From positions 62,001-126,000 of IMG/VR virus record IMGVR_UViG_3300036770_008729: a DNA stretch of 64,000 nt; one strand, given 5' to 3'. The translations under genes and the position numbers were made by a program. Of this stretch, positions 3,741 through 62,020 are shown in pieces (the first letter of the stretch is position 1; each line of letters begins with the position of its first letter). The notes under the pieces were generated by a model. It did no database searches. It saw only the letters and a list, made by a program, of their open reading frames with translations, and had not been told where the DNA came from.

Positions 3741-4265
3741 ATGAATAAATGGAAATTTATAAAAGCACTCAACTCACCACTTAAACCATTTAAGTTAAAA
3801 TTTTACTTTGGTAAAATAAGTGTAGGTGTGCCTTATTTCTTCCCACGTAGAACCGTAAAAGATCCTGGTAAACCCGGATACCTTAAATTTGTAGATAAAA
3901 AATTTGGCATTGATGTAGTTTCACTTGGATGGAAAACTAAATGGAGTAGTACTGATTATCGATTAGAATGGGAGCCAAGAATATCATTTGTTTTTTTTAA
4001 GTGGCAATTTGTTATCTTCTTCAATGCACCAGAGTCAGAACACTATTGGCCGATTTGGCTTTACTATCATAATGATACCGATAAGACTAAATCGATTAAA
4101 GAAAGAATCGAACAATGTCAACAGGAATATCCCCAGATATGGGAAAGATCTCAAAATGGAAAAAAAGAGACCATAAATTATTATGACTATGTCTTAAAAG
4201 ATAAATGGAAAAAGAAACCACTTGATGAGGTTAGAGATAAAAAATTAGATAAGATATTAAAATAA
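3741..4265 (+). CDS. aromatic-rich hypothetical protein with C-terminal RDKKLDKIL tail
   Basis: Start reassigned to ATG 3741 (MNKWKF) behind promoter motif. Confidence 0.75.
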   Translation: MNKWKFIKALNSPLKPFKLKFYFGKISVGVPYFFPRRTVKDPGKPGYLKFVDKKFGIDVVSLGWKTKWSSTDYRLEWEPRISFVFFKWQFVIFFNAPESEHYWPIWLYYHNDTDKTKSIKERIEQCQQEYPQIWERSQNGKKETINYYDYVLKDKWKKKPLDEVRDKKLDKILK

Positions 4266-4269
4266 GTTA

Positions 4270-7200
4270 TCAATTTATTTTGTTAACAATTTTGTTTATA
4301 ACCTTAATATATTCTAAATCTATAATCTTTATTAGGTAAATTCCAGTCTTAGATTCTCCTAAATCTTGTTTTATTTTAGTAATACCTTGACTAACACTTT
4401 GCTTTTTTTGACTTATAAGTTTACCACTAATATCATAAACTTCTATCATAAGCTGTGTTTGATTTTTAGTAATATATTCTACAACAAACTCATTTTGTGT
4501 TGGATTAGGATATACTTTTGCATCCACTTCATCTAATTTAATTTGTGAAGTCTTAACAATCAAACTATCATTATTAGGATTTGCTTGTCTTTGTGTTATA
4601 CAACCAGCTTGTATTACTAAAGTTCTCCAAGTACTAGTTCCACAATTAGTTACTGATCGAACTGATAAAGTTCCTCCATTGAATCCCGATGAGAATGTAA
4701 CATCGATTATTCTACTAATGGAAGAACCAGTAGTTCCATTTGGTAACATCCATTGATAACTTGTTGCGCCATTTACTGCTACAATACTGTAAGTGGATGT
4801 TGCTCCTATGTTACCACATGTTGGTCCTGAGATTGCTCCGGGCACTGGTGGTGTTTTACTTATTGATAATGTTCTTGCTGTACTTCTAACACCACAAGCG
4901 TTTTGTGCTTGAACTTGTATAGTACCTCCAGTAAATTGTGGACTAAACTGTACTAATACATTTCTAGTACCTTGACCTTGAACTATTGTGGCGTTGGATG
5001 GTGCTGTCCAAAAATATGAAGTCGCTCCTGATACTGTACTGCTTGAATACAATACATTACTTGATGTTTGATCTACATTAGTATAAGCAGAACAAACATT
5101 TGTTGTACCTGTAATTCTAGTTGGTGTTGCAGGTGCATTAGTACCCGAACTTGTGACAGTTAAGGTACTTGGTGATCCAGTACCACAACTATTGATTGAT
5201 GCCACTGTTATGTTCCCACTTACAAATGAACTTGTAATAGTGACTTGGATAGTATTAGTACCTTGACCATTGTTTAATGTAATACCATTTGGTACTGTCC
5301 AAGAATAACCAATAGTGGCGTCATACATTGGTGATATTGAGTATGAAGTAGTTGTAGCACAAGTACTTGTTGGACCACTAATCGGACCTGGTATTCCAGG
5401 TAAAGAGTTGATTGTGATAGTAGATGAAGCTGATGATATACAATTGCCTGTTGATGCAGTGTATGTCATTGTACTTGTATTTTTAGCATAAACTGTATTT
5501 CTAATATCACCAGTATAAGATTGTGTTGCTGTTGGATTTATATATAATCCAGTTAATGGTGACCAGGTTACCATTGTTGGAGCATATATACCAAACTTCA
5601 TGTTTGGACGATACTTACTACTTATAAGATTGTTTGCTTCATTAAGTGGTTCACAAACTGAAAAGTCATTATCATAACCTCCATAAACTGAGTTAAATGA
5701 AGTTTGACTAAACTCTACTGCTGAGTTTGTACCAGTACAGTTGCTACAAGAATTGTTTACATCATTGTCGTGACAGATCTCTATTACAATATTGTAAAGT
5801 GGATTCCATGTAAATGATTGATTAAAAGAATATACTTTCCATCCAACTGTAGGTGCTTGTTCTTGTCCAGTAGTGTAAACAGTTACAAAAGGACCTACGG
5901 TAACACTTAAAAGACTACCACTTTCTGTAATATAACCATAAGATAAGTTGTCATTTATGGTGTGAGCTATTTTAATTGTAAAGTTATTTTGGTAACCAGT
6001 ACCTTGTGATAGTACTTTTAATGCTAATGAATTTATATCACCAGCAACTAAACCAAGTGCAAGTAATTCTGATGATCTAATTAGATATTGCACTCTTGAA
6101 CCTTCATAGCTACTTGTATAAGGTGTAATACCTGATTGACCAGTAAGAGTTGTATTGACTCCTAATTGACGACTGAATGTAGCTGATCCTCCTGTTGCTG
6201 TTAATGTTGTAATTGAATTACTACAAGCAGTTGTTATTGAAGGTGTAACTGATAAAGCAGATGGTGTTGGGTTTATTTGTATGTCTACAGATGAAGAAGA
6301 ACTACAACCATCTAAAGTCGATGTTAAAGTATATGTTCCTTCATTATTGTATGTAGCGTTATTAATAGTTGGTGACTGTTGTGATGATGTATAGTTATTT
6401 GGTCCAACCCAACTAAATGTATTACCAATATCAGAACTTCCAATTAAACTTATAGTTGAATTTTGACATACAGAACTATTGTTTGTACTAGCATCTGTTA
6501 AAGGTATAGCTTTTATAGTCACACTAACTGGTATATTTGATGAACCACATTCTGAGGTAATAGTTAGTGAGTAGTTACCAGCATCAGCATTTGTAGTATT
6601 GTCAATTAAGAGTGATGGTGTTTCAGCACTTGGATTGATTGATGGATCAATTACTATACTATTTTTATACCATTGGTATTGCACTTGACTACCAGTTGCT
6701 ACAACTGTTAAATCTATTGGATCATTAAAACAAACAGATGATATTGTTGATGGTTGTGAAACAATTTGTAAAGTAGGTATTCCAGTTATATTAATAACAT
6801 CACTAACACTACAACTTCTGTAAGTTGAAGTTAAAGTATAACTATTTAATCCTACTAAAGCAGATGGTATAGTTGCATTTAAAGTACTTGCTGAAAAACT
6901 AGGACCTGTCCAACTGATTGTTGGTGCTACTGTATTTAAAGTAATGGTAATGCTCCAGTCATTAAATGTACCTATATCACCAGTATAGTCATCAGTAATA
7001 CGAAGTGTCCAAACACCATCAGCACTTCCAGTTAAGTTAGAAAAAGGTTGCTCAGGTGTGTATGTTCCTGTGAATGGAGCTGTACCTGATGTTATAGCGG
7101 TACCTGAAGTAGAGAATACTGTGTTAACATAGTTGTCACCAGTACTTCCATTATCACTTGATAAATCTATTGAAGAACCATTTGGAGCAATTAAAGTTAA

Positions 7201-13818: not shown

Positions 13819-14895
13819 TTAAGCATTAAAGTTTTTAGAATTTTTCAATTTCTCTAAAATTGATTTTTCTTCTAAATTAATACTTTTAGGTATAGAAATT
13901 GAAATCTTTACAAATAAGTCACCAAGTCCTAAATTGATATCGGGAACTCCTTTACCTGTTAGTCTTATTACTTTGCCGTGATGTGTTCCTGGTTCTATTG
14001 TTATTGAAACTTCTCCATGTGGAGTTTTAACTTTTAGGTTTGCTCCAATGATGGCATCAATAACTGAGATATTCTTTTCAACAATTATATTATTCTGTTC
14101 TCTGGTAAAATAAAATTCTCTAATTTCTTCAACTACAATTTGTAAATTACCTGGAACACCATCTTTTATATGATTTCCATACCCGGTCATATTAAGTTGC
14201 ATTCCATTAGAAACTCCAATTGGAATTTCTACTTCTATTGTTTCTTCTCTTAATTGTGTACCGTCACCATAACATTGACCACATTTATTTTTGACTTGTT
14301 TGCCGGCACCGCCACAATCAGGACAAGTTGTAGTTTGTCTTATTTGACCAAATGGTGTATTTTGAACAACTGTTCTATTTCCCGATCCACCACAAGGTAA
14401 ACAATCTCTAGTATCAGTTCCACCCTTTCCATTACAAGAGTTACAACTGTATTGTCTTTTATATTTTAATTTCTTCTTACAACCTTTAATAATTTCATCA
14501 ATTGTAAGTGAGACTTTTATTCTTAAATCGGCACCTCTTGCTTGAGGTCTTTGTTGATAGTTTCTATTCCTATTTCCGAAACCACCACCGAATATGTCTC
14601 CAAATTGACTGAAGATATCATCCATGTTAAATCCATGTCCTTGTCCGCCAAATGGATTACCTCCTCCAAATGGATTACCATCAGCTGTTCCAAATCTGTC
14701 ATAATTAGCTCTTTTTTGAGAGTCTGACAAAACATCATATGCTTCGGCTGCTTCTTTAAATTTAGATTCTGCATCAGGATTTCCTGGATTTCGGTCAGGA
14801 TGGTATTGCATAGCCATCTTACGGTAGGCTTTCTTTATTTCATCTTCTGATGAACCTTTGTTAACTCCTAATATATTGTAGTAATCTTTACTCAT
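13819..14895 (-). CDS. dnaJ: DnaJ chaperone
   Basis: J domain DYYNILGV...HPD, G/F region, four CxxCxGxG zinc repeats, C-terminal domain. Confidence 0.96.
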
Positions 14896-15232: not shown

Positions 15233-15732
15233 TTTACTATCTTAGTAATTTTTTTATCTCTTATTTCTTCCAATATATTTTGAGATTCTATACATTTTCT
15301 AATTGATTTAGCAACATAGTTATCTACAATTAGTGTTAGAGTTTCAAGAGTTCTATCTAACTCATCGAAATGAAATAATGATGTTTTAACCTTTGGTATC
15401 ATAATCAATAGGTAATCTATGAATTCATCAATATCAAAAGATAATCGATATAATTCTTTTTGATAATCTGTTAATATCTCTGGAGTTTCAATGAAAAACT
15501 TTGCCCAAACTCTTCTAATAGAAGGTAAAATTAAATCTAAAAAATCATCATCACTTTCATAGAATGAACCCTGGAATATATCATCTTCGAATAGATGCAG
15601 TTTCTTATCTAAGACATAGTTTAATATATTCTTTAGTGATTCGGAGTTTCTTACACCTGAACAAACTGAATCTATAACAATTAATCTATATTGTTCATCA
15701 TCTCTGATGGCGAAGATGTTAGCGTGTTTCAT
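15229..15732 (-). CDS. hypothetical protein with RDKKITKIV tail
   Basis: 167 aa ORF, coupled to neighbours. Confidence 0.7.
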   Translation of the reverse strand: MKHANIFAIRDDEQYRLIVIDSVCSGVRNSESLKNILNYVLDKKLHLFEDDIFQGSFYESDDDFLDLILPSIRRVWAKFFIETPEILTDYQKELYRLSFDIDEFIDYLLIMIPKVKTSLFHFDELDRTLETLTLIVDNYVAKSIRKCIESQNILEEIRDKKITKIVK

Positions 15733-16205
15733 TTACCTAAAATGATTTTCGGATATCTAAATGGTTTTCCATTTAATGAATAACCTTTACCTACTACATC
15801 AATGATTTTAGATTCACCAACTTCCATAACAGAAATTACTTCATGTAAATCCTCATCATATGTTTCTGTTTGAATTTCTTCAATACCTTGACTTTTTAAG
15901 AAACTTTGTAGTTTTGTAGATATAAGGTCTAGACCTTTTTTTGCTTCATCATTTTTAACTGACTTTATTGCGAAAGTTAAATCGTTATCCATATCTAAAA
16001 GTGAAGTAAGCATTTTAACTTTTGTATTAGATACAAGTTCTTCTTTTTCTTTAACAACTCTTCTTTTATAATTGTCAAAATCAGCATAAAGAAGAAGATA
16101 TTTTTTCTCAGATTCGGATAATTTTTGTTCTAATTCTTTATGTTTTTCTAATAATTCATCAAAAGGAGTTACGACTTTCTCCGTGTTTTCAGTATTTTCT
16201 TCCAT
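15729..16205 (-). CDS. grpE: GrpE nucleotide exchange factor
   Basis: ADFDNYKRR, DEDLHEVI, KGYSLNGKPFR. Confidence 0.9.
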   Translation of the reverse strand: MEENTENTEKVVTPFDELLEKHKELEQKLSESEKKYLLLYADFDNYKRRVVKEKEELVSNTKVKMLTSLLDMDNDLTFAIKSVKNDEAKKGLDLISTKLQSFLKSQGIEEIQTETYDEDLHEVISVMEVGESKIIDVVGKGYSLNGKPFRYPKIILGK

Positions 16206-41763: not shown

Positions 41764-43611
41764 CTACTTTAACAACTCAGTCTTTCTTAAATCAGAGTTT
41801 TTACCAAACCAAACATCTAAACTTACATTTGATACATCATCTTTAGTTATAGATGTCATTCTTGGATTATTAATAATGTCTTGATACTCATCATCCACTA
41901 AAGCTGCTAAACCTTTTTTATACTTAATATCAAATTGTTTTAAGTCGTTTTTTTCAACAAACTGATTATATTCTGATTGTGTATAGAAAATAAGTTTCTT
42001 TTTACCTTTTTGTTTTGGTATAGCAACCACAATAGGTGTTTCTACTTTGTAAATCATTTTTCTATCAAACATTTCTGGCCAATACTTATAGAAAAAGTTA
42101 ATAAGAAGACCTGCTATCGAATTACCATCAACATCAGCATCTACATAAAATAGAACTCTACCATATCTTAAATCCCTTAAGTCAACCGTTTGTCCTAATT
42201 TAAGACCAATTGCAGCCATCAAATTAACCACTTCCTCATTTTGAACCAGCTTCTGATTAGTCATTTCTGATACATTAACAAACTTACCTTTAAGTGCAAA
42301 GGCACCCATAGTTTCTGGAGTTCTATACTTTCTAAATGCGGAAATAGCAGAATCACCCTCAAATAAACCAATAGAACATTTCCAGCGGTCTTTACCTTTG
42401 GCATCAATCAGTTTCTCAACTTTGATTTTACTTAATTTCTTATTAAGGTCTCTTTGTAGTTTAGATTCTTCTGCATTTTTCTTTTGTTGAATCCAATCTA
42501 AAATAGAATTAACGATTTCTGATTTAATAATTTGTGCAACAAATTTAGATGTTACCTCAAAAGTAGAACCAAAATCTTTTACTTCTGTAATCAACTTCTC
42601 TTTAGTTTGTGATGAGAATGATGGATTTATTATAGTAGAGTTTAAGAAAAGAAACATATGATTTTTTAGTTCAGATGGTTTAACATCTACTTTGTGTTTC
42701 TTTAGGAAAAACTCTTTTAACTGACTAATAATTTGATTCATTATGTAATCCACGTGGGTTCCACCATCATAAGTTTCAGTAGAGTTAGCAAAACTTACTT
42801 GTTGAAATCCAGATTCTGATAAGGCAACACCGATAGACCAGGTCTTATCTTTTTTAACATCATAGAAAAACTCTTCGTGATAAAGTTTGATATAGTCCTC
42901 AAATGATTTTATATTTATGAACTTATCATTAAAATAAAATTTGATGTTGGGGTTACATCCTGCTAAGTCCCAAACTCGCTTTTCAATTACTTTAAAGTGA
43001 TCGTTATCAATCTTTTCAATTCCAAATTGAGTTAAGTCTGGTTTCCATTTTATTTCAGTAAAGTTTTTAGTACCAGGTTTTACTTTTGCTTTATCTCTGT
43101 CTCTCATATTATTATAGAATCTTTGAGAGAAGTGATTTTTACCATCACAGGTGGTTACAATAAATTCAGTTGAAAAGATGTTTGTCAATTTAGCACCCAG
43201 TCCATTTAGACCGGCTACTGTTCTTTCATCGGTGTCATCATAGTTGGATCCAGACATAAGGTTGCCAAAAATAACCTCAGGAACATATTGATTATGTTCT
43301 TTGTGTATTTGAACGATAATACCACCGTTATCTTTAACAGATAAAGTATTATTCTCTATATCAACGTGAACATCTATTCTATTTAAGCTTTTATTTCTTT
43401 GATGTTCATCAACTGCGTTTGTAATAACTTCATCAAAGATTTTGATGAATGAGGGGATGTAAGTTACGGACTTAAGTTCCATTTTACTTTCATCGTTTAT
43501 TAAGTATTTTTGAGAAGTGTTGGGTTTATTAGAGCCTACATAAGTTCCAGGTCTAAGAAGAACGTGACTAATTTGGTCTAATACTTTATATTTATCTTCA
43601 ATTTTTTTCAT
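41764..43611 (-). CDS. type II DNA topoisomerase ATPase/TOPRIM subunit (T4 gp39+gp60-like)
   Basis: HVLLRPGTYVGS, FDEVITNAVD, GLNGLGAK, LFEGDSA, DADVDG, YKKGL. Confidence 0.95.
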   Translation of the reverse strand: MKKIEDKYKVLDQISHVLLRPGTYVGSNKPNTSQKYLINDESKMELKSVTYIPSFIKIFDEVITNAVDEHQRNKSLNRIDVHVDIENNTLSVKDNGGIIVQIHKEHNQYVPEVIFGNLMSGSNYDDTDERTVAGLNGLGAKLTNIFSTEFIVTTCDGKNHFSQRFYNNMRDRDKAKVKPGTKNFTEIKWKPDLTQFGIEKIDNDHFKVIEKRVWDLAGCNPNIKFYFNDKFINIKSFEDYIKLYHEEFFYDVKKDKTWSIGVALSESGFQQVSFANSTETYDGGTHVDYIMNQIISQLKEFFLKKHKVDVKPSELKNHMFLFLNSTIINPSFSSQTKEKLITEVKDFGSTFEVTSKFVAQIIKSEIVNSILDWIQQKKNAEESKLQRDLNKKLSKIKVEKLIDAKGKDRWKCSIGLFEGDSAISAFRKYRTPETMGAFALKGKFVNVSEMTNQKLVQNEEVVNLMAAIGLKLGQTVDLRDLRYGRVLFYVDADVDGNSIAGLLINFFYKYWPEMFDRKMIYKVETPIVVAIPKQKGKKKLIFYTQSEYNQFVEKNDLKQFDIKYKKGLAALVDDEYQDIINNPRMTSITKDDVSNVSLDVWFGKNSDLRKTELLK

Positions 43612-51305: not shown

Positions 51306-52655
51306 ATGACTATGATGACTGAAAAATCTATTTCTGAGTTTCTCAGTAATGAATATAAGGATTTCGCCATGTATGTGGTCGAAGGACGTGCAATACCATC
51401 AAGTATTGACGGGTTCAAACCCACACAAAGAAAAATTATTCATGTTGCCAATCAAATCTGGAAAACCGGAAATGAAAAAACACTTAAAGTGTTTCAATTA
51501 AGTGGTAAGGTCGCCTCTGATTGTTTCTACCATCACGGCGATATGTCCTTATCAAATGCCATAATAAATATGGCTCAAAAGTTTAAGAACAACGCTCCCC
51601 TTTTAGAAGAAGAAGGTCAGTTTGGTTCTCTTAGGTCTCCACAACCTGGAGCTCCTCGTTATATCGGAACCAAACTAAATGATAACTTCCGTCTAATATA
51701 CAAAGACTTTGAGCTACTTCAATATAAAGAAGAAGAAGGAGAACAAATTGAACCTAAATATTTCTTACCTATTGTTCCTACCGTTTTATTAAACGGATCA
51801 TCTGGAATTGCAGTTGGATTTGCCTCAAACATCTTAAATAGAGATATAAAAAGTATTATTGATGCTTCTGTTAGAGTTCTTATGGGTAAAGAGCCAGGTG
51901 AAGTAAAACCACATTTAAATGGATTTTTAGGTGAGTTTATACAAGATACAGAAAATAATAAAAGATGGATTATTAGAGGTAAGTGTGAAAGAGTTAATAC
52001 TTCTACCGTGAGAATAACTGAACTTCCACCATCAACAACTTATGAAAAGTATGAAGAGGTTTTGGATAAATTGGTGGATGATAAAGTAATTGTTTCTTAT
52101 GATGATAACTGTAAGGATAATATAGATTATACAATCAAATTCACAAGAGTAGATTTAGAAAAGTTCGATGATGAGAAGTTGTTAAGAGTATTGAAGTTAG
52201 AGGAATCATCAACTGAGATTTACTCAACACTGGATGAGTTTGGTAAATTAAAAATATTTGATAATACAACAGACATTATTAAATACTTTGTTAATTTCAG
52301 ATTAACTTATTATCATAAGAGAAAGTCATTCTTATTAGAAAGAATGAATAAAGAATTAAAACTTCTTTCCAATCGAGGTAGATTTATTAAAGCGATTTTA
52401 GATGAGAAGCTAAAAGTTAATAATGTTGTAAAGTCAGAAATCGTAGCACAGATTGAATCTTTGAGTTTAGATAAGATAGATGATTCTTATGATTACTTAT
52501 TGAAAATGCCTATTTACTCTTTAACAAAAGAAGTATTTGAGAAGTTAAAAGAAGATTTCAAATTGAAAAAGGAAGAGATTACAAAGCTGGAAGCAACTGA
52601 TCCTAAGGATATGTATTTAGGAGATTTGGCGGAATTGAAAAAGAAGTATAAATAG
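51306..52655 (+). CDS. type II DNA topoisomerase breakage-reunion subunit (T4 gp52-like)
   Basis: RAIPSSIDGFKPTQRK, YHHGD, APRY (catalytic Tyr), LLNGSSGIAVGF, ITELP. Confidence 0.95.
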   Translation: MTMMTEKSISEFLSNEYKDFAMYVVEGRAIPSSIDGFKPTQRKIIHVANQIWKTGNEKTLKVFQLSGKVASDCFYHHGDMSLSNAIINMAQKFKNNAPLLEEEGQFGSLRSPQPGAPRYIGTKLNDNFRLIYKDFELLQYKEEEGEQIEPKYFLPIVPTVLLNGSSGIAVGFASNILNRDIKSIIDASVRVLMGKEPGEVKPHLNGFLGEFIQDTENNKRWIIRGKCERVNTSTVRITELPPSTTYEKYEEVLDKLVDDKVIVSYDDNCKDNIDYTIKFTRVDLEKFDDEKLLRVLKLEESSTEIYSTLDEFGKLKIFDNTTDIIKYFVNFRLTYYHKRKSFLLERMNKELKLLSNRGRFIKAILDEKLKVNNVVKSEIVAQIESLSLDKIDDSYDYLLKMPIYSLTKEVFEKLKEDFKLKKEEITKLEATDPKDMYLGDLAELKKKYK

Positions 52656-52718: not shown

Positions 52719-53141
52719 ATGAAAAATCTATTCTTAGATGATATAAGAATTCCAAAAGATGCAATCGGCCTAGTTGATTCTAAATTAAATCAATTTTACT
52801 GGTCTCAAGATTGGTCTATTGTTAGAAGTTATGATGAATTCGTTCAATTTATTACCGAAAAAGGTTTGCCCGACTTTATATCATTTGACCACGACTTAGC
52901 AGACGACCACTATAACGACCTTTTTTCTGATAAAAATTGGGCAAAAAAAAATAGTGATATAAAATTAGACTACAATTCATATAAAGAAAAAACTGGATAC
53001 GAGTGTGCTAAATGGTTAGTAGATTGGTGTGTTGATAATGGATTGAAATTGCCAGATTATGTTGTTCATTCTGCTAATCCAGTTGGTAAGAGTAATATAA
53101 TTTCTTATTTAGAAAATGCTAAAAAGCATCTTTCATTATGA
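52719..53141 (+). CDS. cyclic-phosphate processing receiver-domain protein
   Basis: LFLDDIR.P, ISFDHDL, KTGYECAKWL, VHSANPVG; TATATTTG 4 nt upstream. Confidence 0.8.
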   Translation: MKNLFLDDIRIPKDAIGLVDSKLNQFYWSQDWSIVRSYDEFVQFITEKGLPDFISFDHDLADDHYNDLFSDKNWAKKNSDIKLDYNSYKEKTGYECAKWLVDWCVDNGLKLPDYVVHSANPVGKSNIISYLENAKKHLSL

Positions 53142-53156
53142 TAGACATAATTCATT

Positions 53157-53184
53157 AAAAACCTCCTTTTTAGGAGGCTTTTTT
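53157..53184 (+). terminator. intrinsic terminator
   Basis: cctcct-tttt-aggagg followed by T-run. Confidence 0.75.
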
Positions 53185-53628: not shown

Positions 53629-53796
53629 ATGAAAACAATTAAAATAAAAATACCAAAAGATAAAATACTTAAGATGAATAAAGCCGCGTCTAGACAAGCT
53701 CAAATAGAGCTCGGTATTCCACATCTAAGATCTACAATCTGTAAGTCTAAAAAAACTTATACCAGAAAAACTAAACACAAGGTACCGAAATTTTAA
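53629..53796 (+). CDS. 55 aa basic peptide, ArfA/BrfA-like candidate
   Basis: MKTIKIKIPKDKILKMNKAASRQAQIELGIPHLRSTICKSKKTYTRKTKHKVPKF; below track cutoff. Confidence 0.6.
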   Translation: MKTIKIKIPKDKILKMNKAASRQAQIELGIPHLRSTICKSKKTYTRKTKHKVPKF

Positions 53797-53826: not shown

Positions 53827-54393
53827 ATGAAACATCTAAAAAACTATAAGTTATTTGAAAATTTAAATACACCTATCAGTATAGAACAATTCTTATCTGA
53901 AATCAATTTCCCTCAAGAATTAAGAACACAAGTAATAAACTGGTGGAATTTAAACAGAGGTGAATTTATAATTCATTGTTTTAATTTCTCATCACCTCAA
54001 CCAATAGCTGGTGTTTTTCTTGGTGTAGATGAAATTGCTATCAATAAAAGATTACCAATGCCACCTCATATTAAATTATTTTTAGCTCTTCATGAATCTG
54101 GACATTGTAATCAACACAGAGAAGGAAGATTTATGACTGGTTATTATGACACCGTAATTGCTGGTAACAAACCAGCCTTTTTACAAGCCTATATGGATCT
54201 TGAAAAAGAAGCTAATGACTATGCTTTTAATTCATTAAGAGAGATGGGATTAGAAAGATTGTATCAATTTGAGGAATCTAGATTAAGAGGAAATCAAAGA
54301 GCAGGTGAAATGGTTTGGTCAATGATGACTGCTGATATAGCGAGATTCAATCCTAATGATTTTATTGACCTTTTGAAAAAACAAATACTTTAA
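53827..54393 (+). CDS. HExxH zinc metallopeptidase-like protein with CTS-like N-terminus
   Basis: MKHLKNYKLFEN; ALHESGHCNQH; EKEANDYA; AATATATA (53815-53822) 4 nt upstream. Confidence 0.75.
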   Translation: MKHLKNYKLFENLNTPISIEQFLSEINFPQELRTQVINWWNLNRGEFIIHCFNFSSPQPIAGVFLGVDEIAINKRLPMPPHIKLFLALHESGHCNQHREGRFMTGYYDTVIAGNKPAFLQAYMDLEKEANDYAFNSLREMGLERLYQFEESRLRGNQRAGEMVWSMMTADIARFNPNDFIDLLKKQIL

Positions 54394-55003: not shown

Positions 55004-55363
55004 ATGAACTGCAAATTAATTTTTACCATAATTTTTCTAATCACTTCGATTGTTGTTAAGTCGCAAACATTCAATATCACTGATAGAAATGGTTATACCG
55101 ATGAAGTTATTGTCAAATACCAATCAGCTTTGAATGGTGCTGATTTAGAAAATTTCAGAGGAAAAACAATCACAAAAACATTCGAGTTTACAAACGGAAT
55201 AAAGTTCACTCTAATTTCTGCAAAAGAACTTTTCATTTCCGGAAAATCAATCGACTTAAATCTTTACAAAGATGAAAGACCAGAAAGTTACAGAGAGCCT
55301 GTTTTCTTTCTGACCGATACTGGTTACTTATTGGCTCAATATAAAAAATTAGAAAAACAATGA
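55004..55363 (+). CDS. secreted protein with signal peptide, coupled to T9SS cargo gene
   Basis: MNCKLIFTIIFLITSIVVKSQ; ATGA overlap with next gene. Confidence 0.7.
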   Translation: MNCKLIFTIIFLITSIVVKSQTFNITDRNGYTDEVIVKYQSALNGADLENFRGKTITKTFEFTNGIKFTLISAKELFISGKSIDLNLYKDERPESYREPVFFLTDTGYLLAQYKKLEKQ

Positions 55364-58300
55364 AAAAATTAACTCTATTTTTAATTGCGACCTTATTTAG
55401 TTTCATTGCAATTTCACAACCAGCAAATAATAATTGTGGAACTGCTCAAAACTTAGGAACATTACCAACTCCAGCGGCTTGTCCCAATGGTGTAGGTGCG
55501 AATGTCAATGTTACTGGAACAACTGTAAATGCTACTTATCCACTACCTTATAATTACTTATTAGGTTGTCAAACTGGTGGAAATCAACCAGCACCATCTC
55601 CTGATGTTTGGTATCAATTTGTGGCATCTGGAAATCAAGTCAATATAAATATAACACCTGGTTCTAGTCCATTTTTAGCTAATCCATCTATCACTCTTTG
55701 GTCTGGTAGTTGTGGTTCATTGAATGGATTCAACTGTGATAATAATGGATCTAACAATGGTAATAACTCTGCTACATTTGAACCATTAACACCAGGTCAA
55801 ACTTATTACATACAAATATCAGGTTCTTCTGCAACATCAACTGGTAACTTTAATATGACAGTAAACGCTAGTAATGATTGCAATAATTGTCTTCAAAATG
55901 TAAGTTTGGTTGCTACACCTAATCCAGTCAATGGATTTTATCAACCTGGTCAAACTATAAACTTTTGTTTAACAATAACTGGATATAATCAAGTAAGTTC
56001 AAATTGGCTTCATGGGGTAATACCAACTTTTGGTAATGGTTGGAATCTAGCTACACTTACAACAACACCGGCCAATTCTTGTTCAACTGCTGGAAATTGG
56101 CAATGGGCAAACTCTAACACATCAACTGCAACAAATCTCATCACAGGTCCCGGATTCTACTATTTCTCAGGATCTGGAGGTTCTGGTAATAACTTTGGAG
56201 ATAATGGATCGACTTGTACAAGAACTTTTTGTTGGTCTATTCAAACAAAATCAGGTTGCACATCAGGAAATAACTTAAATATATCAGTAAATACAACCGC
56301 TGATGGTGAAACTGGTTCTTGGACAAGTCCTGCTTGTCAGGGTGATCCAAATATAAACTTTGCTGCTCAATTGAATTGTTGTCAAACTACGGCTACATCA
56401 ACTTCTCTAACTTGTTTCGGTGGAACAAATGCTACGGCTACTGCAAATCCAACAGGTGTATCACCATTTAACTACTCTTGGAATACAACACCAGTTCAAA
56501 CAACTCAAACCGCTACTGGTCTTTCTGCTGGAAGTTATACAGTAACAGTAACTGATAACGGTGGTTGTGTTTCATCAGCCTCTGTTACAATCACTCAACC
56601 AACACAACTTCAAGTTACAACCACTTCAACAAATGCTAGTTGTGGTCAATTAAATGGATCTGCAACTGCTACTGCTTCAGGTGGAACTGGACCTTACTCC
56701 TACTCTTGGAATACAACTCCTGTTCAAACAACTGGAACCGCAACTGGACTTGGACCTGGAACTTATACAGTAACCGCAACATCTGCTGGTAACTGTCAAT
56801 CAACGGGTACGGTTACTATTTCATCAACTGGTTCAATAACTGCAACCTCGACATCAACTAATGTTACTTGTAATGGTGCAAATAATGGAACAGCTACTGC
56901 TAATCCAAATGGTTCTACTAATTATACTTATTTGTGGAATACAATACCTCCACAAAATACTCAAACCGCCACAGGTTTAGCTCCTGGTAGTTATACTTGC
57001 ACAGTGACAAGTTTTGGATGTCAGACAACTACAACAGTAACTATCACACAACCTCCAGTTTTAACTGCAGCAATAACAACATCAAATGTAATTTGTAATG
57101 GTGGAAATACTGGTTCGGCAGTTGTTACACCAAATGGTGGAACACCAGGATATACTTATCTTTGGACAACCTCACCAAATCAAATAACTGCTACTGCTAC
57201 AAATCTTACATCAGGAACTTACTCTGTAAATGTAACTGATTTGAATGGTTGTACTGTTATAGCATCAGCGAACATTACCCAACCTCAACAATTAAATATA
57301 ACTTTGGTATCATCACAGAATCCAGGATGTAGTGGTTCTTCAACTGGTCAAATTGTGGTTTCTGCATCAGGTGGTGTTGGACCTACTTACTTTTACACTT
57401 TGAATGGTGGAACTCCACAAACATCAGGAACTTTTACTGGATTATCAGGTGGAACTTATACTATTTCTGTAAGTGATGCAAATAACTGCACACAACAAAT
57501 ACAGGTTTCTTTGACTCAACCTTTTCCTATTTCTTCTTCTTATACAGTAACAAATGTTAATTGTAATAGTGGAAATAACGGACAAATACAATTAACGACT
57601 ATTGGAGGAACACCTCCATATACTTATCTTTGGTCTAATTCTTCTCAATCTCCAAATCTCACATCACTTACAGCGGGAACTTATTCAGTTGTTATTACGG
57701 ATGCTTCGGGTTGTCAATTTAATTTGACTAATATAGTAGTTACTCAACCAAATGCTATTAATATACTTTTAACTCCGAATCCATCTTCGATTTGTATTGG
57801 ACAATCTTCAAGTATCACTGCACTTATTGTTGGTGGGACTTTACCATACAACTTTGTATGGTCTAATGGTCAATTAACACAAAATATAACTGTTACACCT
57901 ACTACAACAACTGGTTATACTTTACAAGTATCAGATGCAAATGGTTGTGGACTTAGTGCTAATACGATTATTAATGTTAATCCACCACTCACTGTTTTAA
58001 CAACTTCCTCACAAGGAACTATTTGTGTTGGTCAATCATCGACATTAACTGCTAGTGTGACCGGAGGTAATGGTGGACCATATACTTATAACTGGAATCC
58101 AACAGCTCAATCTGGTCAGTCAATAATAGTAACACCGGGAACTACCACACTTTACACAGTGACAGTAGGTGATGGTTGTTCTACACCAGTAACTAGCACA
58201 GTAACAGTAAATGTTAATTTACTTCCGGTTGTTCAATATACAACAACTGCACTTTCAGGATGTGAGCCTTTAACTGTTACTTTTACCAATAATACACCAA

Positions 58301-58977
58301 ATGTAAATTGTGTTTGGTTTATAAATGGTAATCAAGTAACAAACTGCACCACATCTCAATCTTTTAATACATCTGGAAGTTATTCAGTAACTCTTTCAGT
58401 GACCAATACAAATGGTTGTTCTAACACATCACCAAATATATTGGTGAATGTTTATCCAAAGGCGGTTTCTAACTTTTCAGCTAACCCAATTGTAACAGAT
58501 TTATTAAACCCAAATGTTAGTTTTACCAACTTCTCTACCTCAGGAAATTATCAGTGGTCTTTTGGAGATGGAAACATTTCTTCACTTATAAACCCACAGA
58601 ATACCTATTCTGATACTGGAAGTTATAATGTTCAGTTAATTGTTGTTTCACCTGATGGGTGTAGGGACACTTCTTCACTTGAGATATACATAAGTGATTT
58701 ATTTACATTTTATATTCCTAATGCTTTTACACCGAATGGTGATGGTAAAAATGATGTATTCACACCTCAGATAAGTGGTGCAGAGTGGTATCAATTCTGG
58801 ATTTACAACAGATGGGGAGAGCAAATTTGGGACTCTGGAACTAATGGTGAACCTTGGAATGGAATCTATAAAGGTAGTTTAGTTCAACAAGATGTTTATG
58901 TTTGGAAGTTGATTGTAAAGGAAAAACAACGAGGCAAAAAGCATTTATTTACAGGACATGTTAGTGTTATTAAATAA
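55360..58977 (+). CDS. SprB-repeat/PKD adhesin-like protein with T9SS type B (gliding motility-associated) C-terminal domain
   Basis: Signal peptide; repeated YSWNT...ATGL..G.YTVTVTD..GC units; PKD (WSFGDG); CTD YIPNAFTPNGDGKNDVF...IYNRWGE...WNG...DVYVWK. Confidence 0.9.
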   Translation: MKKLTLFLIATLFSFIAISQPANNNCGTAQNLGTLPTPAACPNGVGANVNVTGTTVNATYPLPYNYLLGCQTGGNQPAPSPDVWYQFVASGNQVNINITPGSSPFLANPSITLWSGSCGSLNGFNCDNNGSNNGNNSATFEPLTPGQTYYIQISGSSATSTGNFNMTVNASNDCNNCLQNVSLVATPNPVNGFYQPGQTINFCLTITGYNQVSSNWLHGVIPTFGNGWNLATLTTTPANSCSTAGNWQWANSNTSTATNLITGPGFYYFSGSGGSGNNFGDNGSTCTRTFCWSIQTKSGCTSGNNLNISVNTTADGETGSWTSPACQGDPNINFAAQLNCCQTTATSTSLTCFGGTNATATANPTGVSPFNYSWNTTPVQTTQTATGLSAGSYTVTVTDNGGCVSSASVTITQPTQLQVTTTSTNASCGQLNGSATATASGGTGPYSYSWNTTPVQTTGTATGLGPGTYTVTATSAGNCQSTGTVTISSTGSITATSTSTNVTCNGANNGTATANPNGSTNYTYLWNTIPPQNTQTATGLAPGSYTCTVTSFGCQTTTTVTITQPPVLTAAITTSNVICNGGNTGSAVVTPNGGTPGYTYLWTTSPNQITATATNLTSGTYSVNVTDLNGCTVIASANITQPQQLNITLVSSQNPGCSGSSTGQIVVSASGGVGPTYFYTLNGGTPQTSGTFTGLSGGTYTISVSDANNCTQQIQVSLTQPFPISSSYTVTNVNCNSGNNGQIQLTTIGGTPPYTYLWSNSSQSPNLTSLTAGTYSVVITDASGCQFNLTNIVVTQPNAINILLTPNPSSICIGQSSSITALIVGGTLPYNFVWSNGQLTQNITVTPTTTTGYTLQVSDANGCGLSANTIINVNPPLTVLTTSSQGTICVGQSSTLTASVTGGNGGPYTYNWNPTAQSGQSIIVTPGTTTLYTVTVGDGCSTPVTSTVTVNVNLLPVVQYTTTALSGCEPLTVTFTNNTPNVNCVWFINGNQVTNCTTSQSFNTSGSYSVTLSVTNTNGCSNTSPNILVNVYPKAVSNFSANPIVTDLLNPNVSFTNFSTSGNYQWSFGDGNISSLINPQNTYSDTGSYNVQLIVVSPDGCRDTSSLEIYISDLFTFYIPNAFTPNGDGKNDVFTPQISGAEWYQFWIYNRWGEQIWDSGTNGEPWNGIYKGSLVQQDVYVWKLIVKEKQRGKKHLFTGHVSVIK

Positions 58978-60601: not shown

Positions 60602-62020
60602 ATGAAGAATATTTTTTTAACTTTAATATTTTCTCTGATATCAAATCTTTGCTTATCACAAGCTTATTCTACCTGTGCATTAGCCTCTGCGGGTATAGCT
60701 ATATCAAGTGGTGGGTGTATTAATAATCAAACCTTCACAGGGAGTGTAAATATGGCCGGTCTTTGTGTAGGCGGTAATAATCCAGCAATTCACATTAAGT
60801 TTGTAGCTGGTTCTTGTTCACAATTTACAATTACACCAACTGCCAATATCGCTAACATAGGAACTCAAATTCTAACTACTGCGTGTAGTGGTGTTGTTGG
60901 TACAACTGCTTGTCACGAAAATGTTATTGCTGGTGTTCCATTTATGGCAGATGCACATGATAATAGTGGTAATTATTTATTGACACCAGGTACAACTTAT
61001 GTTTTGAGAATATGGGGTGCTGTAGGTACCTCAACATTTAATATTTGTTATAATTCTGGAGTAACAGAGAATCCATCAAACGAATGTTCTGGTGCGTTTG
61101 GTTTAGGAACACTTCCTACGCAGTTTTATAATGGTGGTGATTGCTCATTTACTGGATCTGGAACTGATGCTACAACTTCGGATCCAGCTGCTTCTGGTTT
61201 GTGTGCTGGTTCATTGGAAAATACTCAATGGATTAAATTTCAACCATTGGCTGGTGTTTCTACATTTCAAATTATTGGTAGTTCTATCAATTGTACTGGT
61301 GGTGGATGTGGATTTCAATTTGGTATATTTTCAGGAAGTTGTGGATCTTTAATCTCTGAGGGTTGTTATGGGAATAAAGTTTGCTCTGGTGGACAGTCTG
61401 TATCAGGTCCTACTAACGTTAGTGCTACTGATGGATTTTCAATAGCTTGGTCTGGTACTTCTACAACTGGATTTACAGCAACTATTACAAAAACCGGTGG
61501 TGGTAATTTTATCGGTACAGAGGTTTTTTACTTAGTTATGGATGGCAATGCTGATGCTGATTGTCAATATACTTTACAAGGAACAAATTTACAGGCTTTA
61601 CCAATTGAATTAATCTCTTTTGAAGGTCATTTCAATGGTGAGTTAAACGTTTTACAGTGGTCATGTGCAACTGAAATAAATAATGATTATTTTAGTTTAG
61701 AAAGGTCGGATGATGGAGTAAGTTGGGGAAGTATTGTAAATATATCAGGTGTAGGTAATTCCAACTTAATAACAAATTACTCTTATTATGATAATACTTT
61801 TTTACCTGAAAGGTTTAATTACTATAGATTAAAACAAGTTGACTTCGATGGTAGTTTCAAGTACTTTGATATTATTGCAATAAACAATATGAATATAAAT
61901 AAGCCTAAACTACTAAGAGTTTATAATATCTTAGGGAATAAAGTAGACAAAGAATCAACTGGACTATTGATATATGAATACTCAGATGGTAGTTTCAAAA
62001 AGACATTCGTTAAAGATTAA
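60602..62020 (+). CDS. Cys/Gly-rich secreted protein with Bacteroidota T9SS-type C-terminal region
   Basis: Signal peptide; LPIELISF...WSCATEINNDYFSLERS...YYRLKQVDFDG; short CTD VYNILG...YEYSDGSFKK. Confidence 0.8.
   Translation: MKNIFLTLIFSLISNLCLSQAYSTCALASAGIAISSGGCINNQTFTGSVNMAGLCVGGNNPAIHIKFVAGSCSQFTITPTANIANIGTQILTTACSGVVGTTACHENVIAGVPFMADAHDNSGNYLLTPGTTYVLRIWGAVGTSTFNICYNSGVTENPSNECSGAFGLGTLPTQFYNGGDCSFTGSGTDATTSDPAASGLCAGSLENTQWIKFQPLAGVSTFQIIGSSINCTGGGCGFQFGIFSGSCGSLISEGCYGNKVCSGGQSVSGPTNVSATDGFSIAWSGTSTTGFTATITKTGGGNFIGTEVFYLVMDGNADADCQYTLQGTNLQALPIELISFEGHFNGELNVLQWSCATEINNDYFSLERSDDGVSWGSIVNISGVGNSNLITNYSYYDNTFLPERFNYYRLKQVDFDGSFKYFDIIAINNMNINKPKLLRVYNILGNKVDKESTGLLIYEYSDGSFKKTFVKD

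What the first reader, a model, noticed from the sequence alone, without database searches (positions are those of the whole stretch)
53629..53796. ArfA/BrfA-like ribosome-rescue peptide candidate next to RNA-repair genes
Seen: a 55 aa very basic ORF, 2 nt after the HAD gene, ending RSTICKSKKTYTRKTKHKVPKF. Established: E. coli ArfA (KKGKGSYxRKxKH) and Bacillus BrfA (KSKK...KRKHK) use a basic C-terminal segment to occupy the mRNA channel of stalled ribosomes and recruit a release factor. Inference: a phage rescue factor for ribosomes stalled by host mRNA or tRNA nucleases, forming a translation-salvage module with the receiver and HAD genes.
Basis: inference. Interest (0 to 1): 0.6.

Follow-up and report, generated by a model that had tools for sequence, protein, structure and literature searches.

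The report
ArfA-like ribosome-rescue peptide in jumbo phage
A 55-residue protein of a 281-kb freshwater phage belongs to an unnamed family found in Bacteroidota bacteria and their large phages; its basic tail matches that of ArfA, the peptide that frees ribosomes stuck on broken mRNA, and no ArfA has been reported in this phylum.

Summary
The ORF at 53629-53796 is real. It is 55 aa, starts 2 nt after a HAD_SAK_2 gene, and is under purifying selection (dN/dS about 0.1). It belongs to a family of 47-83 aa proteins: 65 clusters in the exhaustive search, plus single-copy genes in Bacteroidota genomes (24 of 151 in one family, 4 of 301 across the phylum) and in large phages.

No curated model names the phage protein; Pfam ArfA misses it. 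Five results still point to ArfA:
- A family profile's best natural PDB matches are all the E. coli ArfA chains.
- Profile-profile comparison gives P about 2e-4, and 0 of 400 shuffled controls reach that score.
- An HMM built only from ArfA sequences ranks family members first.
- One phage protein passes both Pfam ArfA and DUF7230, and DUF7230 matches 26 of 65 relatives.
- The Lys-His pair that contacts 16S rRNA in ArfA and BrfA is kept.

A fold with a Bacteroidota RF2 gave weak support only.

The most likely function is a constitutively made, release-factor-dependent rescue factor, with confidence about 0.5. BrfA similarity was not detected. The proposed module with the HAD and receiver genes is not conserved in relatives. 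I class it as a new variant of a known kind; it needs biochemical testing.

The parts
53629..53796 (+). 55-aa gene (P0001), a member of an unnamed ArfA/DUF7230-like family of small basic proteins
   Evidence: ORF and translation. Family of 65 representatives. dN/dS 0.08-0.14. Single copy in the 281-kb genome.
53656..53712 (+). Codons 10-28: predicted N-terminal alpha-helix holding the invariant Arg22; candidate release-factor or intersubunit contact
   Evidence: AlphaFold2 with the 116-row alignment predicts helix 10-28 with block pLDDT 96-97. R22 is invariant or nearly so, and G29 is nearly invariant.
53737..53781 (+). Codons 37-51 (ICKSKKTYTRKTKHK): ArfA-like basic tail, the predicted mRNA-channel segment, including the Lys49-His50 pair
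   Evidence: Y44 is invariant; K42, R46 and K49 are at least 90% conserved. The segment aligns with ArfA V29-G46. ArfA residues 31-48 lie in the mRNA tunnel (PMC5378476). The Lys-His pair contacts U534 in ArfA and BrfA (PMC6881298).
53210..53626 (+). Upstream neighbour: HAD_SAK_2 phosphatase gene, whose stop lies 2 nt before the ORF start (probably co-transcribed; context only)
   Evidence: Pfam PF18143, E 4.7e-22. The same order occurs only in a near-identical relative.
52719..53141 (+). cREC_REC receiver-like gene (context only)
   Evidence: Pfam PF20274, E 7.6e-22. Contigs from RNA libraries cover 52727-53034.
53162..53177 (+). Terminator-like hairpin between the cREC and HAD genes, which would separate cREC from the HAD + small-ORF unit
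   Evidence: Consensus scan: 6-bp stem with 4 GC pairs and a T run. This is a pattern match only.

Best explanation
The ORF encodes a small ribosome-binding peptide of the ArfA type. It has a single N-terminal helix followed by an extended Lys/Arg-rich tail of about 17 residues. The proposed mechanism is inferred from ArfA and BrfA. The tail threads into the empty mRNA channel of a ribosome stalled at the 3' end of a cut or truncated mRNA; this includes the Tyr-x-Arg-Lys-x-Lys-His core and the Lys-His pair that contacts 16S rRNA U534 in ArfA and BrfA. The N-terminal half then holds a host class-1 release factor, most likely RF2, in the A site, so that the peptidyl-tRNA is hydrolysed without a stop codon and the ribosome is recycled. 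E. coli ArfA and B. subtilis BrfA are made only from non-stop mRNA. This gene instead has an ordinary stop codon and already has the length of the active, truncated ArfA, so it would be active whenever it is transcribed. The gene comes from a family present in a minority of Bacteroidota chromosomes. A jumbo phage with 27 tRNAs, DnaJ/GrpE and RNA-end repair genes would use it to keep ribosomes available when host or phage nucleases cut mRNAs or tRNAs. Shown here: a real, conserved gene; the family; specific ArfA-like sequence similarity. Inferred: ribosome binding, release-factor recruitment, and the role in infection.
For: (1) The gene is real. (2) Family profile A2 against 177,635 PDB sequences: the only natural proteins at the top are all six E. 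coli ArfA constructs (E 0.09-0.2), and the tail aligns residue for residue. (3) hhalign of the family against an ArfA alignment gives P 1.6e-4 to 2.3e-4 over 32-34 columns. The observed score is 24.9. Shuffled-column controls reach at most 14.8, block-shuffled at most 16.7, 0 of 200 each. The result holds without the phage J2-1 sequence and with enterobacterial ArfA alone. (4) An HMM built only from ArfA sequences puts family members at ranks 1-12 of 6,953 ORFs. (5) Bridge: 26 of 65 relatives match Pfam DUF7230 (best E 2.5e-6). The annotated ArfA of Pseudoalteromonas phage J2-1 passes both PF03889 (41.3 bits) and DUF7230 (28.6 bits), and like this family it lacks the GKG insert. E. coli ArfA itself touches DUF7230 weakly, and a Cryomorpha member touches PF03889 weakly (E 0.073). 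(6) Flavobacteriales members carry G-R-F-R-x-K-V-E-K-S-K-K-T-Y-T-R-K-x-K-H, against ArfA L-F-R-Q-R-V-E-K-N-K-K-(GKG)-S-Y-M-R-K-G-K-H. (7) AlphaFold2 predicts one helix plus an extended tail. (8) Complex with a Bacteroidota RF2: weak support, score 0.34 against a best control of 0.00. This mark was reached by 58 of 80 solved complexes and 2 of 110 mismatched pairs. At 0.60 or under it was reached by only 7 of the 80 solved complexes and by both mismatches that passed. The runs agree in at least 83% of contacts, and the partner pLDDT is at least 60. (9) Canonical ArfA was not found above cut-off in 301 sampled Bacteroidota genomes or in 1,956 FCB-group genomes in a published survey (PMC11633108). 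(10) Phage-borne PF03889 ArfA genes exist elsewhere (PMC12753301).
Against: Pfam ArfA does not report P0001 even at E <= 10, and NCBIfam and PHROGs give nothing useful. With the larger alignment A5 the PDB search no longer lists ArfA. The similarity covers only about 20-30 residues of a low-complexity basic segment, so convergence cannot be excluded; the BrfA authors favour convergence for BrfA and ArfA (PMC6881298). The ArfA hydrophobic patch that binds RF2 Trp319 (Leu19, Leu24, Phe25; PMC5378476) aligns with Gly29, His32 and Leu33 in P0001, so it is not clearly kept. No hairpin lies inside the ORF before the stop codon, so the hallmark non-stop regulation of ArfA and BrfA is absent. The family is patchy in bacteria (4 of 301 across the phylum). 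The complex prediction is only weak and may partly reflect memory of ArfA-RF2 structures. No transcript evidence was obtained for the ORF.
Confidence: 0.5

Rival explanations
1. A small ribosome- or rRNA-binding protein with a role other than rescue. It could be an accessory ribosomal protein, a hibernation or translation-modulating factor, or a phage factor that plugs the mRNA channel of free 30S/70S particles to bias translation. It would use the same basic tail.
For: The ArfA-like part is the channel-binding tail. The part of ArfA that activates RF2 is not clearly conserved in P0001 (together with PMC5378476). The gene has a normal stop codon and no tmRNA-linked regulation. The bacterial copies sit among housekeeping genes. 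A Thermococcus ribosome-bound small protein (6skg_Bo) is a borderline PDB match (E 0.14-0.22).
Against: The family is present in only about 1-16% of sampled Bacteroidota genomes, which does not fit a core ribosomal protein. The predicted complex with RF2 passes the mark weakly while all controls score 0.00. 6skg_Bo is a zinc-finger protein, and this family has no conserved Cys.
Confidence: 0.22
2. A general nucleic-acid-binding basic peptide, such as a DNA or RNA chaperone or a small regulator. Its likeness to ArfA would be convergent, driven by selection for a Lys/Arg-rich segment.
For: The protein is short, very basic and lacks a globular fold: AlphaFold2 predicts one helix and pTM is 0.47. 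No curated family reaches significance. All E-values against ArfA are modest.
Against: The order of residues matters, not only the composition: 0 of 400 shuffled controls reach the observed score. Tyr, Arg and Lys-His are invariant or nearly invariant at the same spacing as in ArfA. ArfA outranks every ribosomal and histone-like protein in the PDB search with the A2 profile.
Confidence: 0.15
3. A dedicated partner of the neighbouring RNA-end repair genes (HAD_SAK_2 phosphatase and cREC receiver), for example an adaptor that brings them to damaged tRNA or ribosomes. This is the module reading of the first reader.
For: There is a 2-nt gap between the HAD stop and the ORF start. The same order occurs in one near-identical metagenomic contig. 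Jumbo-phage cREC and HAD 'Swiss-army-knife' genes are proposed RNA-repair parts (PMC7824862). A T4 Rnl1-type ligase lies elsewhere in the genome.
Against: The linkage is lost in relatives at 71-87% identity, in 14 other viral loci and in 80 bacterial loci, where the neighbours are ETF, acyl-CoA dehydrogenase, RpiB and an M15 dipeptidase. The RNA ligase is about 34 kb away.
Confidence: 0.08
4. Not a gene: a chance open frame in AT-rich phage DNA.
For: The ORF is short, the genome is 30% G+C, and no library family matches.
Against: dN/dS is 0.08-0.14. There are 65 cluster representatives and 94 bacterial species with full-length matches. The bacterial copies are single-copy.
Confidence: 0.01

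Closest known systems
ArfA (alternative ribosome-rescue factor A, Pfam PF03889; E. coli YhdL)
   Same: Size matches the active form (about 55 aa). The tail motif K-x-K-K...[ST]-Y-x-R-K-x-K-H sits at the same position relative to a preceding hydrophobic-x-[EK] pair. The Lys-His pair is kept. The tail is about 17 residues long, matching the minimal functional ArfA tail (residues 31-47). The profile-profile match is P about 2e-4.
   Different: It does not reach the Pfam ArfA threshold. It lacks the Gly-Lys-Gly insert. Its N-terminal half is a confident helix rather than ArfA's unstructured minidomain with the Leu19/Leu24/Phe25 patch. It has a normal stop codon and no internal RNase III or terminator hairpin. 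It occurs in Bacteroidota and their phages rather than in beta- and gamma-proteobacteria.
Pfam DUF7230 (PF23876)
   Same: 26 of 65 relatives match it through the same tail segment, profile positions about 13-38. Phage J2-1 ArfA passes both DUF7230 and ArfA.
   Different: P0001 itself does not match. None of 301 sampled Bacteroidota genomes has a match above the cut-off. DUF7230 has no assigned function, and no paper mentions it.
Phage-encoded PF03889 ArfA genes (Pseudoalteromonas phage J2-1, Citromicrobium phage RXM, pelagiphage HTVC027P gp30, Salmonella phage Arash, Pseudomonas phage pf16)
   Same: These are also small rescue-factor-like genes carried by phages, often large ones. They end soon after the basic motif, without the regulatory C-terminal extension (PMC12753301).
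   Different: They pass the ArfA model and infect Proteobacteria. None has been tested biochemically, as far as the searched literature shows.
BrfA (Bacillus subtilis YqkK)
   Same: The architecture is similar by analogy: an N-terminal alpha-helix, then a positively charged C-terminal segment carrying a Lys-His pair that contacts U534, with about 55 ordered residues (PMC6881298).
   Different: No sequence similarity was detected, and no BrfA chain appeared in the PDB profile searches at E <= 10. BrfA is made from a non-stop mRNA.
ArfT (Francisella tularensis)
   Same: It is a small release-factor-dependent rescue peptide of narrow phyletic range (PMC6299226).
   Different: It was not compared here, because no sequence was available through the tools.

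Membership tests
ArfA (PF03889) | Scores above the curated Pfam gathering threshold (25.5 bits) | tested here: not met
   P0001 has no ArfA match even at E <= 10, and the six-frame search of the whole phage genome finds none. The best family member (Cryomorpha) scores 13 bits, E 0.073. The control, E. coli ArfA, scores 89.5 bits.
ArfA (PF03889) | Basic C-terminal mRNA-tunnel segment with the S/T-Y-x-R-K-x-K-H core | tested here: met
   7 of 12 residues are identical to E. coli ArfA 34-45. HMM and profile alignments place Y44, R46, K47, K49 and H50 on ArfA Y39, R41, K42, K44 and H45. These columns are invariant or at least 90% conserved in the family.
ArfA (PF03889) | Similarity beyond composition (profile-profile comparison with controls) | tested here: met
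   hhalign P 1.6e-4, score 24.9. 0 of 200 column shuffles (max 14.8) and 0 of 200 block shuffles (max 16.7) reach it, and reversed ArfA scores 12.3. The result is robust to the choice of ArfA subset.
ArfA (PF03889) | K-G-K-G-S loop before the Tyr | tested here: not met
   There is a three-residue deletion relative to E. coli ArfA. The same deletion is seen in phage J2-1 ArfA, which still passes PF03889.
ArfA (PF03889) | N-terminal hydrophobic patch (Leu19, Leu24, Phe25) that binds the RF2 switch loop | tested here: inconclusive
   The aligned residues in P0001 are Gly29, His32 and Leu33. Flavobacteriales members keep Phe-Arg at the ArfA Phe25-Arg26 position. The role of the patch is taken from PMC5378476.
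ArfA (PF03889) | Synthesis from a non-stop mRNA (hairpin cleaved or terminated inside the ORF; tmRNA-controlled) | tested here: not met
   The ORFs end 3-10 residues after the Lys-His pair. In phage and bacterial members the predicted hairpins and terminators lie after the stop codon.
ArfA (PF03889) | Recruits RF2 | tested here: inconclusive
   Predicted complex with Cryomorpha RF2: weak support, score 0.34 against a best control of 0.00. The mark was reached by 58 of 80 solved complexes and 2 of 110 mismatched pairs, but at 0.60 or under by only 7 of the 80 solved and by both mismatches that passed. Runs agree in at least 83% of contacts, and partner pLDDT is at least 60.
ArfA (PF03889) | Binds ribosomes with an empty A-site mRNA channel and triggers peptidyl-tRNA hydrolysis | not testable with these tools
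   This needs biochemistry or cryo-EM.
DUF7230 (PF23876) | Scores above the curated threshold (27 bits) | tested here: not met
   P0001 has no match. Relatives: 26 of 65 match at E <= 1, best 2.5e-6. The bacterial members tested score 13.6-20.3 bits.
BrfA | Detectable sequence similarity to B. subtilis BrfA | tested here: not met
   No BrfA chain appears among the PDB matches of family profiles A2 or A5 at E <= 10. The BrfA structure is deposited as 6SZS according to PMC6881298.
ArfT | Sequence similarity to F. tularensis ArfT | not tested
   No ArfT sequence could be obtained through the tools.

The most novel reading that the evidence does not exclude
This family is the so far unrecognised release-factor-dependent alternative rescue factor of Bacteroidota. 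It would be a divergent branch of an ArfA/DUF7230 superfamily that escaped every survey, and that large phages have captured repeatedly as an always-on version. The phages would use it to recycle ribosomes jammed by RNA-targeting defences, or by their own host-mRNA degradation, without tmRNA tagging.
Probability: 0.4. Interest if true: 0.75.

Novelty: new variant of a known kind. Interest (0 to 1): 0.62.

Why it matters
Release-factor-dependent rescue peptides (ArfA, ArfT, BrfA) are known only from narrow groups of Proteobacteria and Bacillus. A 2024 survey found arfA in 0 of 1,956 genomes of the Fibrobacterota-Chlorobiota-Bacteroidota group (PMC11633108). The authors of the BrfA study predicted that unidentified systems exist in other bacteria (PMC6881298).

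If confirmed, an ArfA-like family in gut and rumen Bacteroidales, Flavobacteriales and their phages would have four consequences:
- It would extend this mechanism to a major phylum.
- It would give a function to part of Pfam DUF7230.
- It would link ArfA-type tails across phyla.
- It would show that phages carry constitutive rescue factors as part of their translation toolkit, alongside tRNAs, chaperones and RNA repair genes.

The idea is directly testable with a 55-residue synthetic peptide.

Tried and rejected
- PHROGs gave only two marginal hits to unnamed small families (E 0.07 and 0.25), and NCBIfam gave none.
- phmmer of P0001 alone against the PDB found nothing. tblastn against 50,697 phage records found no match.
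- With the larger alignment A5 the PDB search lost the ArfA matches and listed only 6skg_Bo at E 0.14. I treat this as a real weakening of the case, not as noise.
- The search for related loci with the full 65-row alignment failed for lack of a conserved stretch, so a 14-row subset was used.
- The Swiss-Prot references tried for a Bacteroidota RF2 were not held. I used RF2 read from a Cryomorpha genome, with a 16-row alignment.
- The structure prediction shows one helix and no fold that could be searched, so no fold search was run.
- Reads: contigs from metatranscriptome libraries cover only the cREC gene (52727-53034) and not the ORF, so expression of the ORF is neither shown nor excluded.
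- Non-stop regulation was looked for and not found.
- The phage has no tmRNA, release factor or RtcB.
- The module idea with the HAD and cREC genes was rejected on the synteny evidence.
- Only table 11 was used as the genetic code.

Full report
THE OBSERVATION. It starts 2 nt after the stop of a 138-aa gene that matches Pfam HAD_SAK_2 (E 4.7e-22). Upstream of that lies a cREC_REC receiver-like gene (E 7.6e-22), and upstream again a T4-type topoisomerase II subunit. A terminator-like hairpin at 53162-53177 separates the cREC gene from the HAD + small-ORF pair (pattern match only).

The window is bases 62001-126000 of a 281,114-bp virus record that IMG/VR classes as a provirus and that CheckV estimates to be 94% complete. 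The genome has 30% G+C throughout and 27 tRNA genes. It has no tmRNA, no release factor and no RtcB. It has one T4 Rnl1-type RNA ligase about 34 kb upstream of the ORF. It also encodes DnaJ and GrpE. A 1,205-aa protein with SprB repeats, PKD domains and a CHU_C type IX secretion signal lies 1.5 kb downstream and points to a Bacteroidota host. Near-identical DNA occurs in subsurface, freshwater and lake metagenomes from about ten studies.

IS IT A GENE? Yes. Four close homologues (71-89% identity) keep the frame, and their differences cluster away from the motif. Codon comparison with two related contigs gives dN/dS of 0.08-0.14. The exhaustive HMM search of 1.84 billion cluster representatives found 65 proteins at E <= 1e-3. 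Nearly all are 47-60 aa and matched end to end. The gene is single-copy in the phage.

THE FAMILY. The consensus is an N-terminal K-I-x-K-E-x-x-L-K-M-x-R-a-a-R-R-x-x-x-I-E-x-G, a variable linker, then V-H-K-S-K-K-x-Y-x-R-K-x-K-H-K. Arg22 and Tyr44 are invariant, and Lys42, Arg46, Lys49 and Gly29 are at least 90% conserved. AlphaFold2 with the 116-row alignment predicts one helix (residues 10-28, pLDDT about 97) and an extended tail (pLDDT 67-81).

A scan of one genome per prokaryote species, using only the exact pattern KTYTRKxKH, found 94 species. All 80 loci kept are from Bacteroidota: Bacteroidales MAGs, Bacteroides gallinarum DSM 18171, and Flavobacteriales including Cryomorpha and Chryseobacterium. 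In genome samples the family is single-copy and patchy. It was found in 4 of 301 genomes across the phylum and in 24 of 151 genomes of the family of B. gallinarum. The bacterial neighbours are housekeeping genes: ETF alpha and beta, acyl-CoA dehydrogenase, RpiB and an M15 dipeptidase.

Fourteen IMG/VR contigs of 11-344 kb also carry the family. Metagenomic relatives of the phage subtype sit on phage-like contigs. The Atlas look-alikes are unnamed 'hypothetical protein' clusters from Bacteroidota.

IS IT ArfA-LIKE? The curated models do not detect it. Pfam ArfA (PF03889) does not report P0001 at E <= 10 and finds nothing in the whole phage genome. NCBIfam and PHROGs give nothing useful. Several independent comparisons nevertheless point specifically to ArfA.

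(a) BLASTP of P0001 against E. coli ArfA, taken from NC_000913, aligns KSKKTYTRKTKH with KGKGSYMRKGKH.

(b) The 65-row family profile was searched against 177,635 distinct PDB sequences. It returned two designed repeat proteins, whose scores are sums of many weak repeats, and then all six distinct E. coli ArfA constructs (E 0.09-0.2). The tail aligned to P-L-F-R-Q-R-V-E-K-N-K-K-(gkg)-S-Y-M-R-K-G-K-H.

(c) hhalign against a 15-row ArfA alignment (seven enterobacterial proteins and eight phage proteins, each passing PF03889) gives P 2.3e-4 with A2 and 1.6e-4 with A5 over 32-34 columns.
- The observed score is 24.9.
- 200 random column shuffles of the ArfA alignment gave 7.8 +/- 1.9 (max 14.8).
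- 200 shuffles within 10-column blocks gave 9.4 +/- 2.1 (max 16.7).
- The reversed alignment gave 12.3.
The result survives removal of the J2-1 sequence (P 2.6e-4) and use of enterobacterial ArfA alone (P 4e-4).

(d) In the reverse direction, an HMM built only from ArfA sequences was searched against all 6,953 ORFs of at least 30 aa in the 94 fetched loci. It places family members at ranks 1-12 (E 0.005-0.05).

(e) There is a bridge through Pfam DUF7230.
- 26 of the 65 relatives match DUF7230 (best E 2.5e-6).
- The annotated ArfA of Pseudoalteromonas phage J2-1 passes both the ArfA threshold (41.3 bits) and the DUF7230 threshold (28.6 bits). It lacks the Gly-Lys-Gly insert, as this family does.
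- E. coli ArfA touches DUF7230 weakly (E 0.11).
- A Cryomorpha member touches PF03889 weakly (E 0.073).

(f) The Flavobacteriales subtype (G-R-F-R-x-K-V-E-K-S-K-K-T-Y-T-R-K-x-K-H) is visibly intermediate between P0001 and ArfA.

Some evidence goes the other way. With the larger, Bacteroidales-dominated alignment the PDB search no longer lists ArfA, and all E-values are modest. I put homology of the tail with ArfA at roughly two in three.

MAPPING ONTO WHAT IS KNOWN OF ArfA AND BrfA. In the E. coli cryo-EM structures, ArfA residues 31-48 lie in the mRNA tunnel. Truncation at Asn47 is tolerated, but truncation after Met40 abolishes function. A hydrophobic patch (Leu19, Leu24, Phe25) binds RF2 Trp319 (PMC5378476). 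In the hhalign alignment, P0001 Ile37-Cys38 fall on ArfA Val29-Glu30, and Tyr44/Arg46/Lys47/Lys49/His50 fall on Tyr39/Arg41/Lys42/Lys44/His45. The 17 residues that follow Cys38 equal the length of the minimal functional ArfA tail.

The Lys-His pair is the one element that the BrfA authors found shared between ArfA and BrfA, and it contacts U534 of 16S rRNA (PMC6881298). It is Lys49-His50 in P0001, and Lys49 is at least 90% conserved. The RF2-binding patch is not clearly kept: it aligns with Gly29, His32 and Leu33. Instead there is a confident N-terminal helix, which by analogy recalls BrfA's helix alpha-1 rather than ArfA's unstructured N-terminus. No sequence similarity to BrfA was detected. 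ArfT was not tested.

RELEASE FACTOR. A co-fold of P0001 (alignment A5) with RF2 read from the Cryomorpha genome that also carries a family member (alignment A6) gave 'weak support': score 0.34 against a best control of 0.00.
- The mark was reached by 58 of 80 solved complexes and 2 of 110 mismatched pairs.
- At 0.60 or under it was reached by only 7 of the 80 solved complexes and by both mismatches that passed.
- The runs agree in at least 83% of contacts, and the partner's pLDDT is at least 60.
This raises my odds a little. It may partly reflect memory of solved ArfA-RF2 complexes.

REGULATION. E. coli ArfA and B. subtilis BrfA are translated from mRNAs that are cut or terminated before the stop codon, so they accumulate only when tmRNA fails (PMC6881298, PMC11633108). 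In this family the ORFs stop 3-10 residues after the Lys-His pair, and in both phage and bacterial members the predicted hairpins lie after the stop codon. The protein would therefore be made in its active length whenever it is transcribed. That makes sense for a phage, but it is a real difference from ArfA.

THE 'MODULE' CLAIM. A near-identical relative (P0002, 85-89% identity) keeps HAD_SAK_2 directly upstream. Relatives at 87% and 71% identity have unrelated small ORFs on both sides and no HAD or cREC homologue. None of the 14 other viral loci has these neighbours either. In six of them the gene lies just upstream of a homologue of window gene 60602-62020, and in two it lies next to dnaJ.

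The cREC and HAD 'Swiss-army-knife' genes are proposed RNA-end repair parts of jumbo phages (PMC7824862). That review mentions ribosome rescue by PTH2 but does not mention ArfA. The adjacency is thematically suggestive but not conserved, so I do not count it as a functional module.

WHAT IS KNOWN. Phage genes that pass the ArfA model exist and are sometimes annotated: J2-1, Citromicrobium phage RXM, and pelagiphage HTVC027P gp30, which is highly expressed during infection (PMC12753301). For Bacteroidota, a survey of 15,259 genomes found arfA in 0 of 1,956 genomes of the FCB group (PMC11633108). I found no PF03889 match above threshold in 301 sampled genomes and no DUF7230 match above threshold either. 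No paper mentions DUF7230.

VERDICT. The ORF is a real gene of a conserved, unnamed family. The best-supported reading is an ArfA-type, release-factor-dependent ribosome-rescue peptide made constitutively (confidence about 0.5). The main rival is a ribosome-binding peptide with a different role. It fails formal ArfA membership on the Pfam threshold, the GKG loop and non-stop regulation. It shares the tunnel-binding core, the size and the Lys-His contact pair. I class it as a new variant of a known kind. Its main interest is that it would extend RF-dependent rescue to Bacteroidota and their phages, and it is cheap to test.

Noticed in passing
L101:1483-1635 (Pseudoalteromonas phage J2-1, MF988720.1 63035-63190): The annotated phage ArfA passes both Pfam ArfA (41.3 bits) and Pfam DUF7230 (28.6 bits). 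DUF7230 therefore looks like an ArfA-related family rather than an independent family of unknown function.
   Followed up: partly
L097:1498-1638 (Salmonella phage Arash gp99c): This gene is annotated 'ribosomal protein L2' but is a clear PF03889 ArfA (69.6 bits), and it sits next to phage tRNA genes. In Pseudomonas phage pf16 and Ralstonia phage RsoM2USA the ArfA-like ORFs are not annotated; the records instead annotate an ORF on the opposite strand.
   Followed up: partly
window 55360-58977 (+): A 1,205-aa secreted protein with five SprB repeats, PKD domains and a CHU_C type IX secretion signal is encoded inside a phage genome. It suggests a Bacteroidota host and possibly a phage-encoded cell-surface protein.
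   Followed up: no
window 13819-14895 (-) and 15729-16205 (-): The phage encodes a full-length DnaJ (J domain, Cys-rich domain and C-terminal domain) and a GrpE. In related jumbo-phage loci L010 and L012 the small ArfA-like gene lies next to dnaJ.
   Followed up: partly
G000:C1 258020-264410 (outside the window): Most of the phage's 27 tRNA genes form a cluster here. No tmRNA was found.
   Followed up: no
window 53827-54393 (+): The 188-aa gene just downstream carries an H-E-S-G-H motif of the HExxH type. Its only match is a marginal hit to a PHROG 'metallo-protease' family (E 0.016), and it has no Pfam match.
   Followed up: no
L005-L009 and L011, about 4004-5230; window 60602-62020 (+): In six viral loci the ArfA-like gene lies immediately upstream of, and slightly overlaps the longest frame of, a homologue of the window's 472-aa gene at 60602-62020. 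That gene has no Pfam family.
   Followed up: no
L146:6604-7737 (-) and the contig of P0148: In two phage-like metagenomic contigs the family member lies close to a protein of about 375 aa with an S1 RNA-binding domain and to a small protein with a UVR domain.
   Followed up: no
window 52727-53034: Contigs from lake metatranscriptome libraries of two studies cover the cREC receiver gene only. DNA carry-over cannot be excluded.
   Followed up: no
window 41764-43611 (-) and 51306-52655 (+): The T4-type topoisomerase II is split into a GyrB/Toprim subunit and a gp52-like GyrA-type subunit. They are encoded about 8 kb apart on opposite strands.
   Followed up: no
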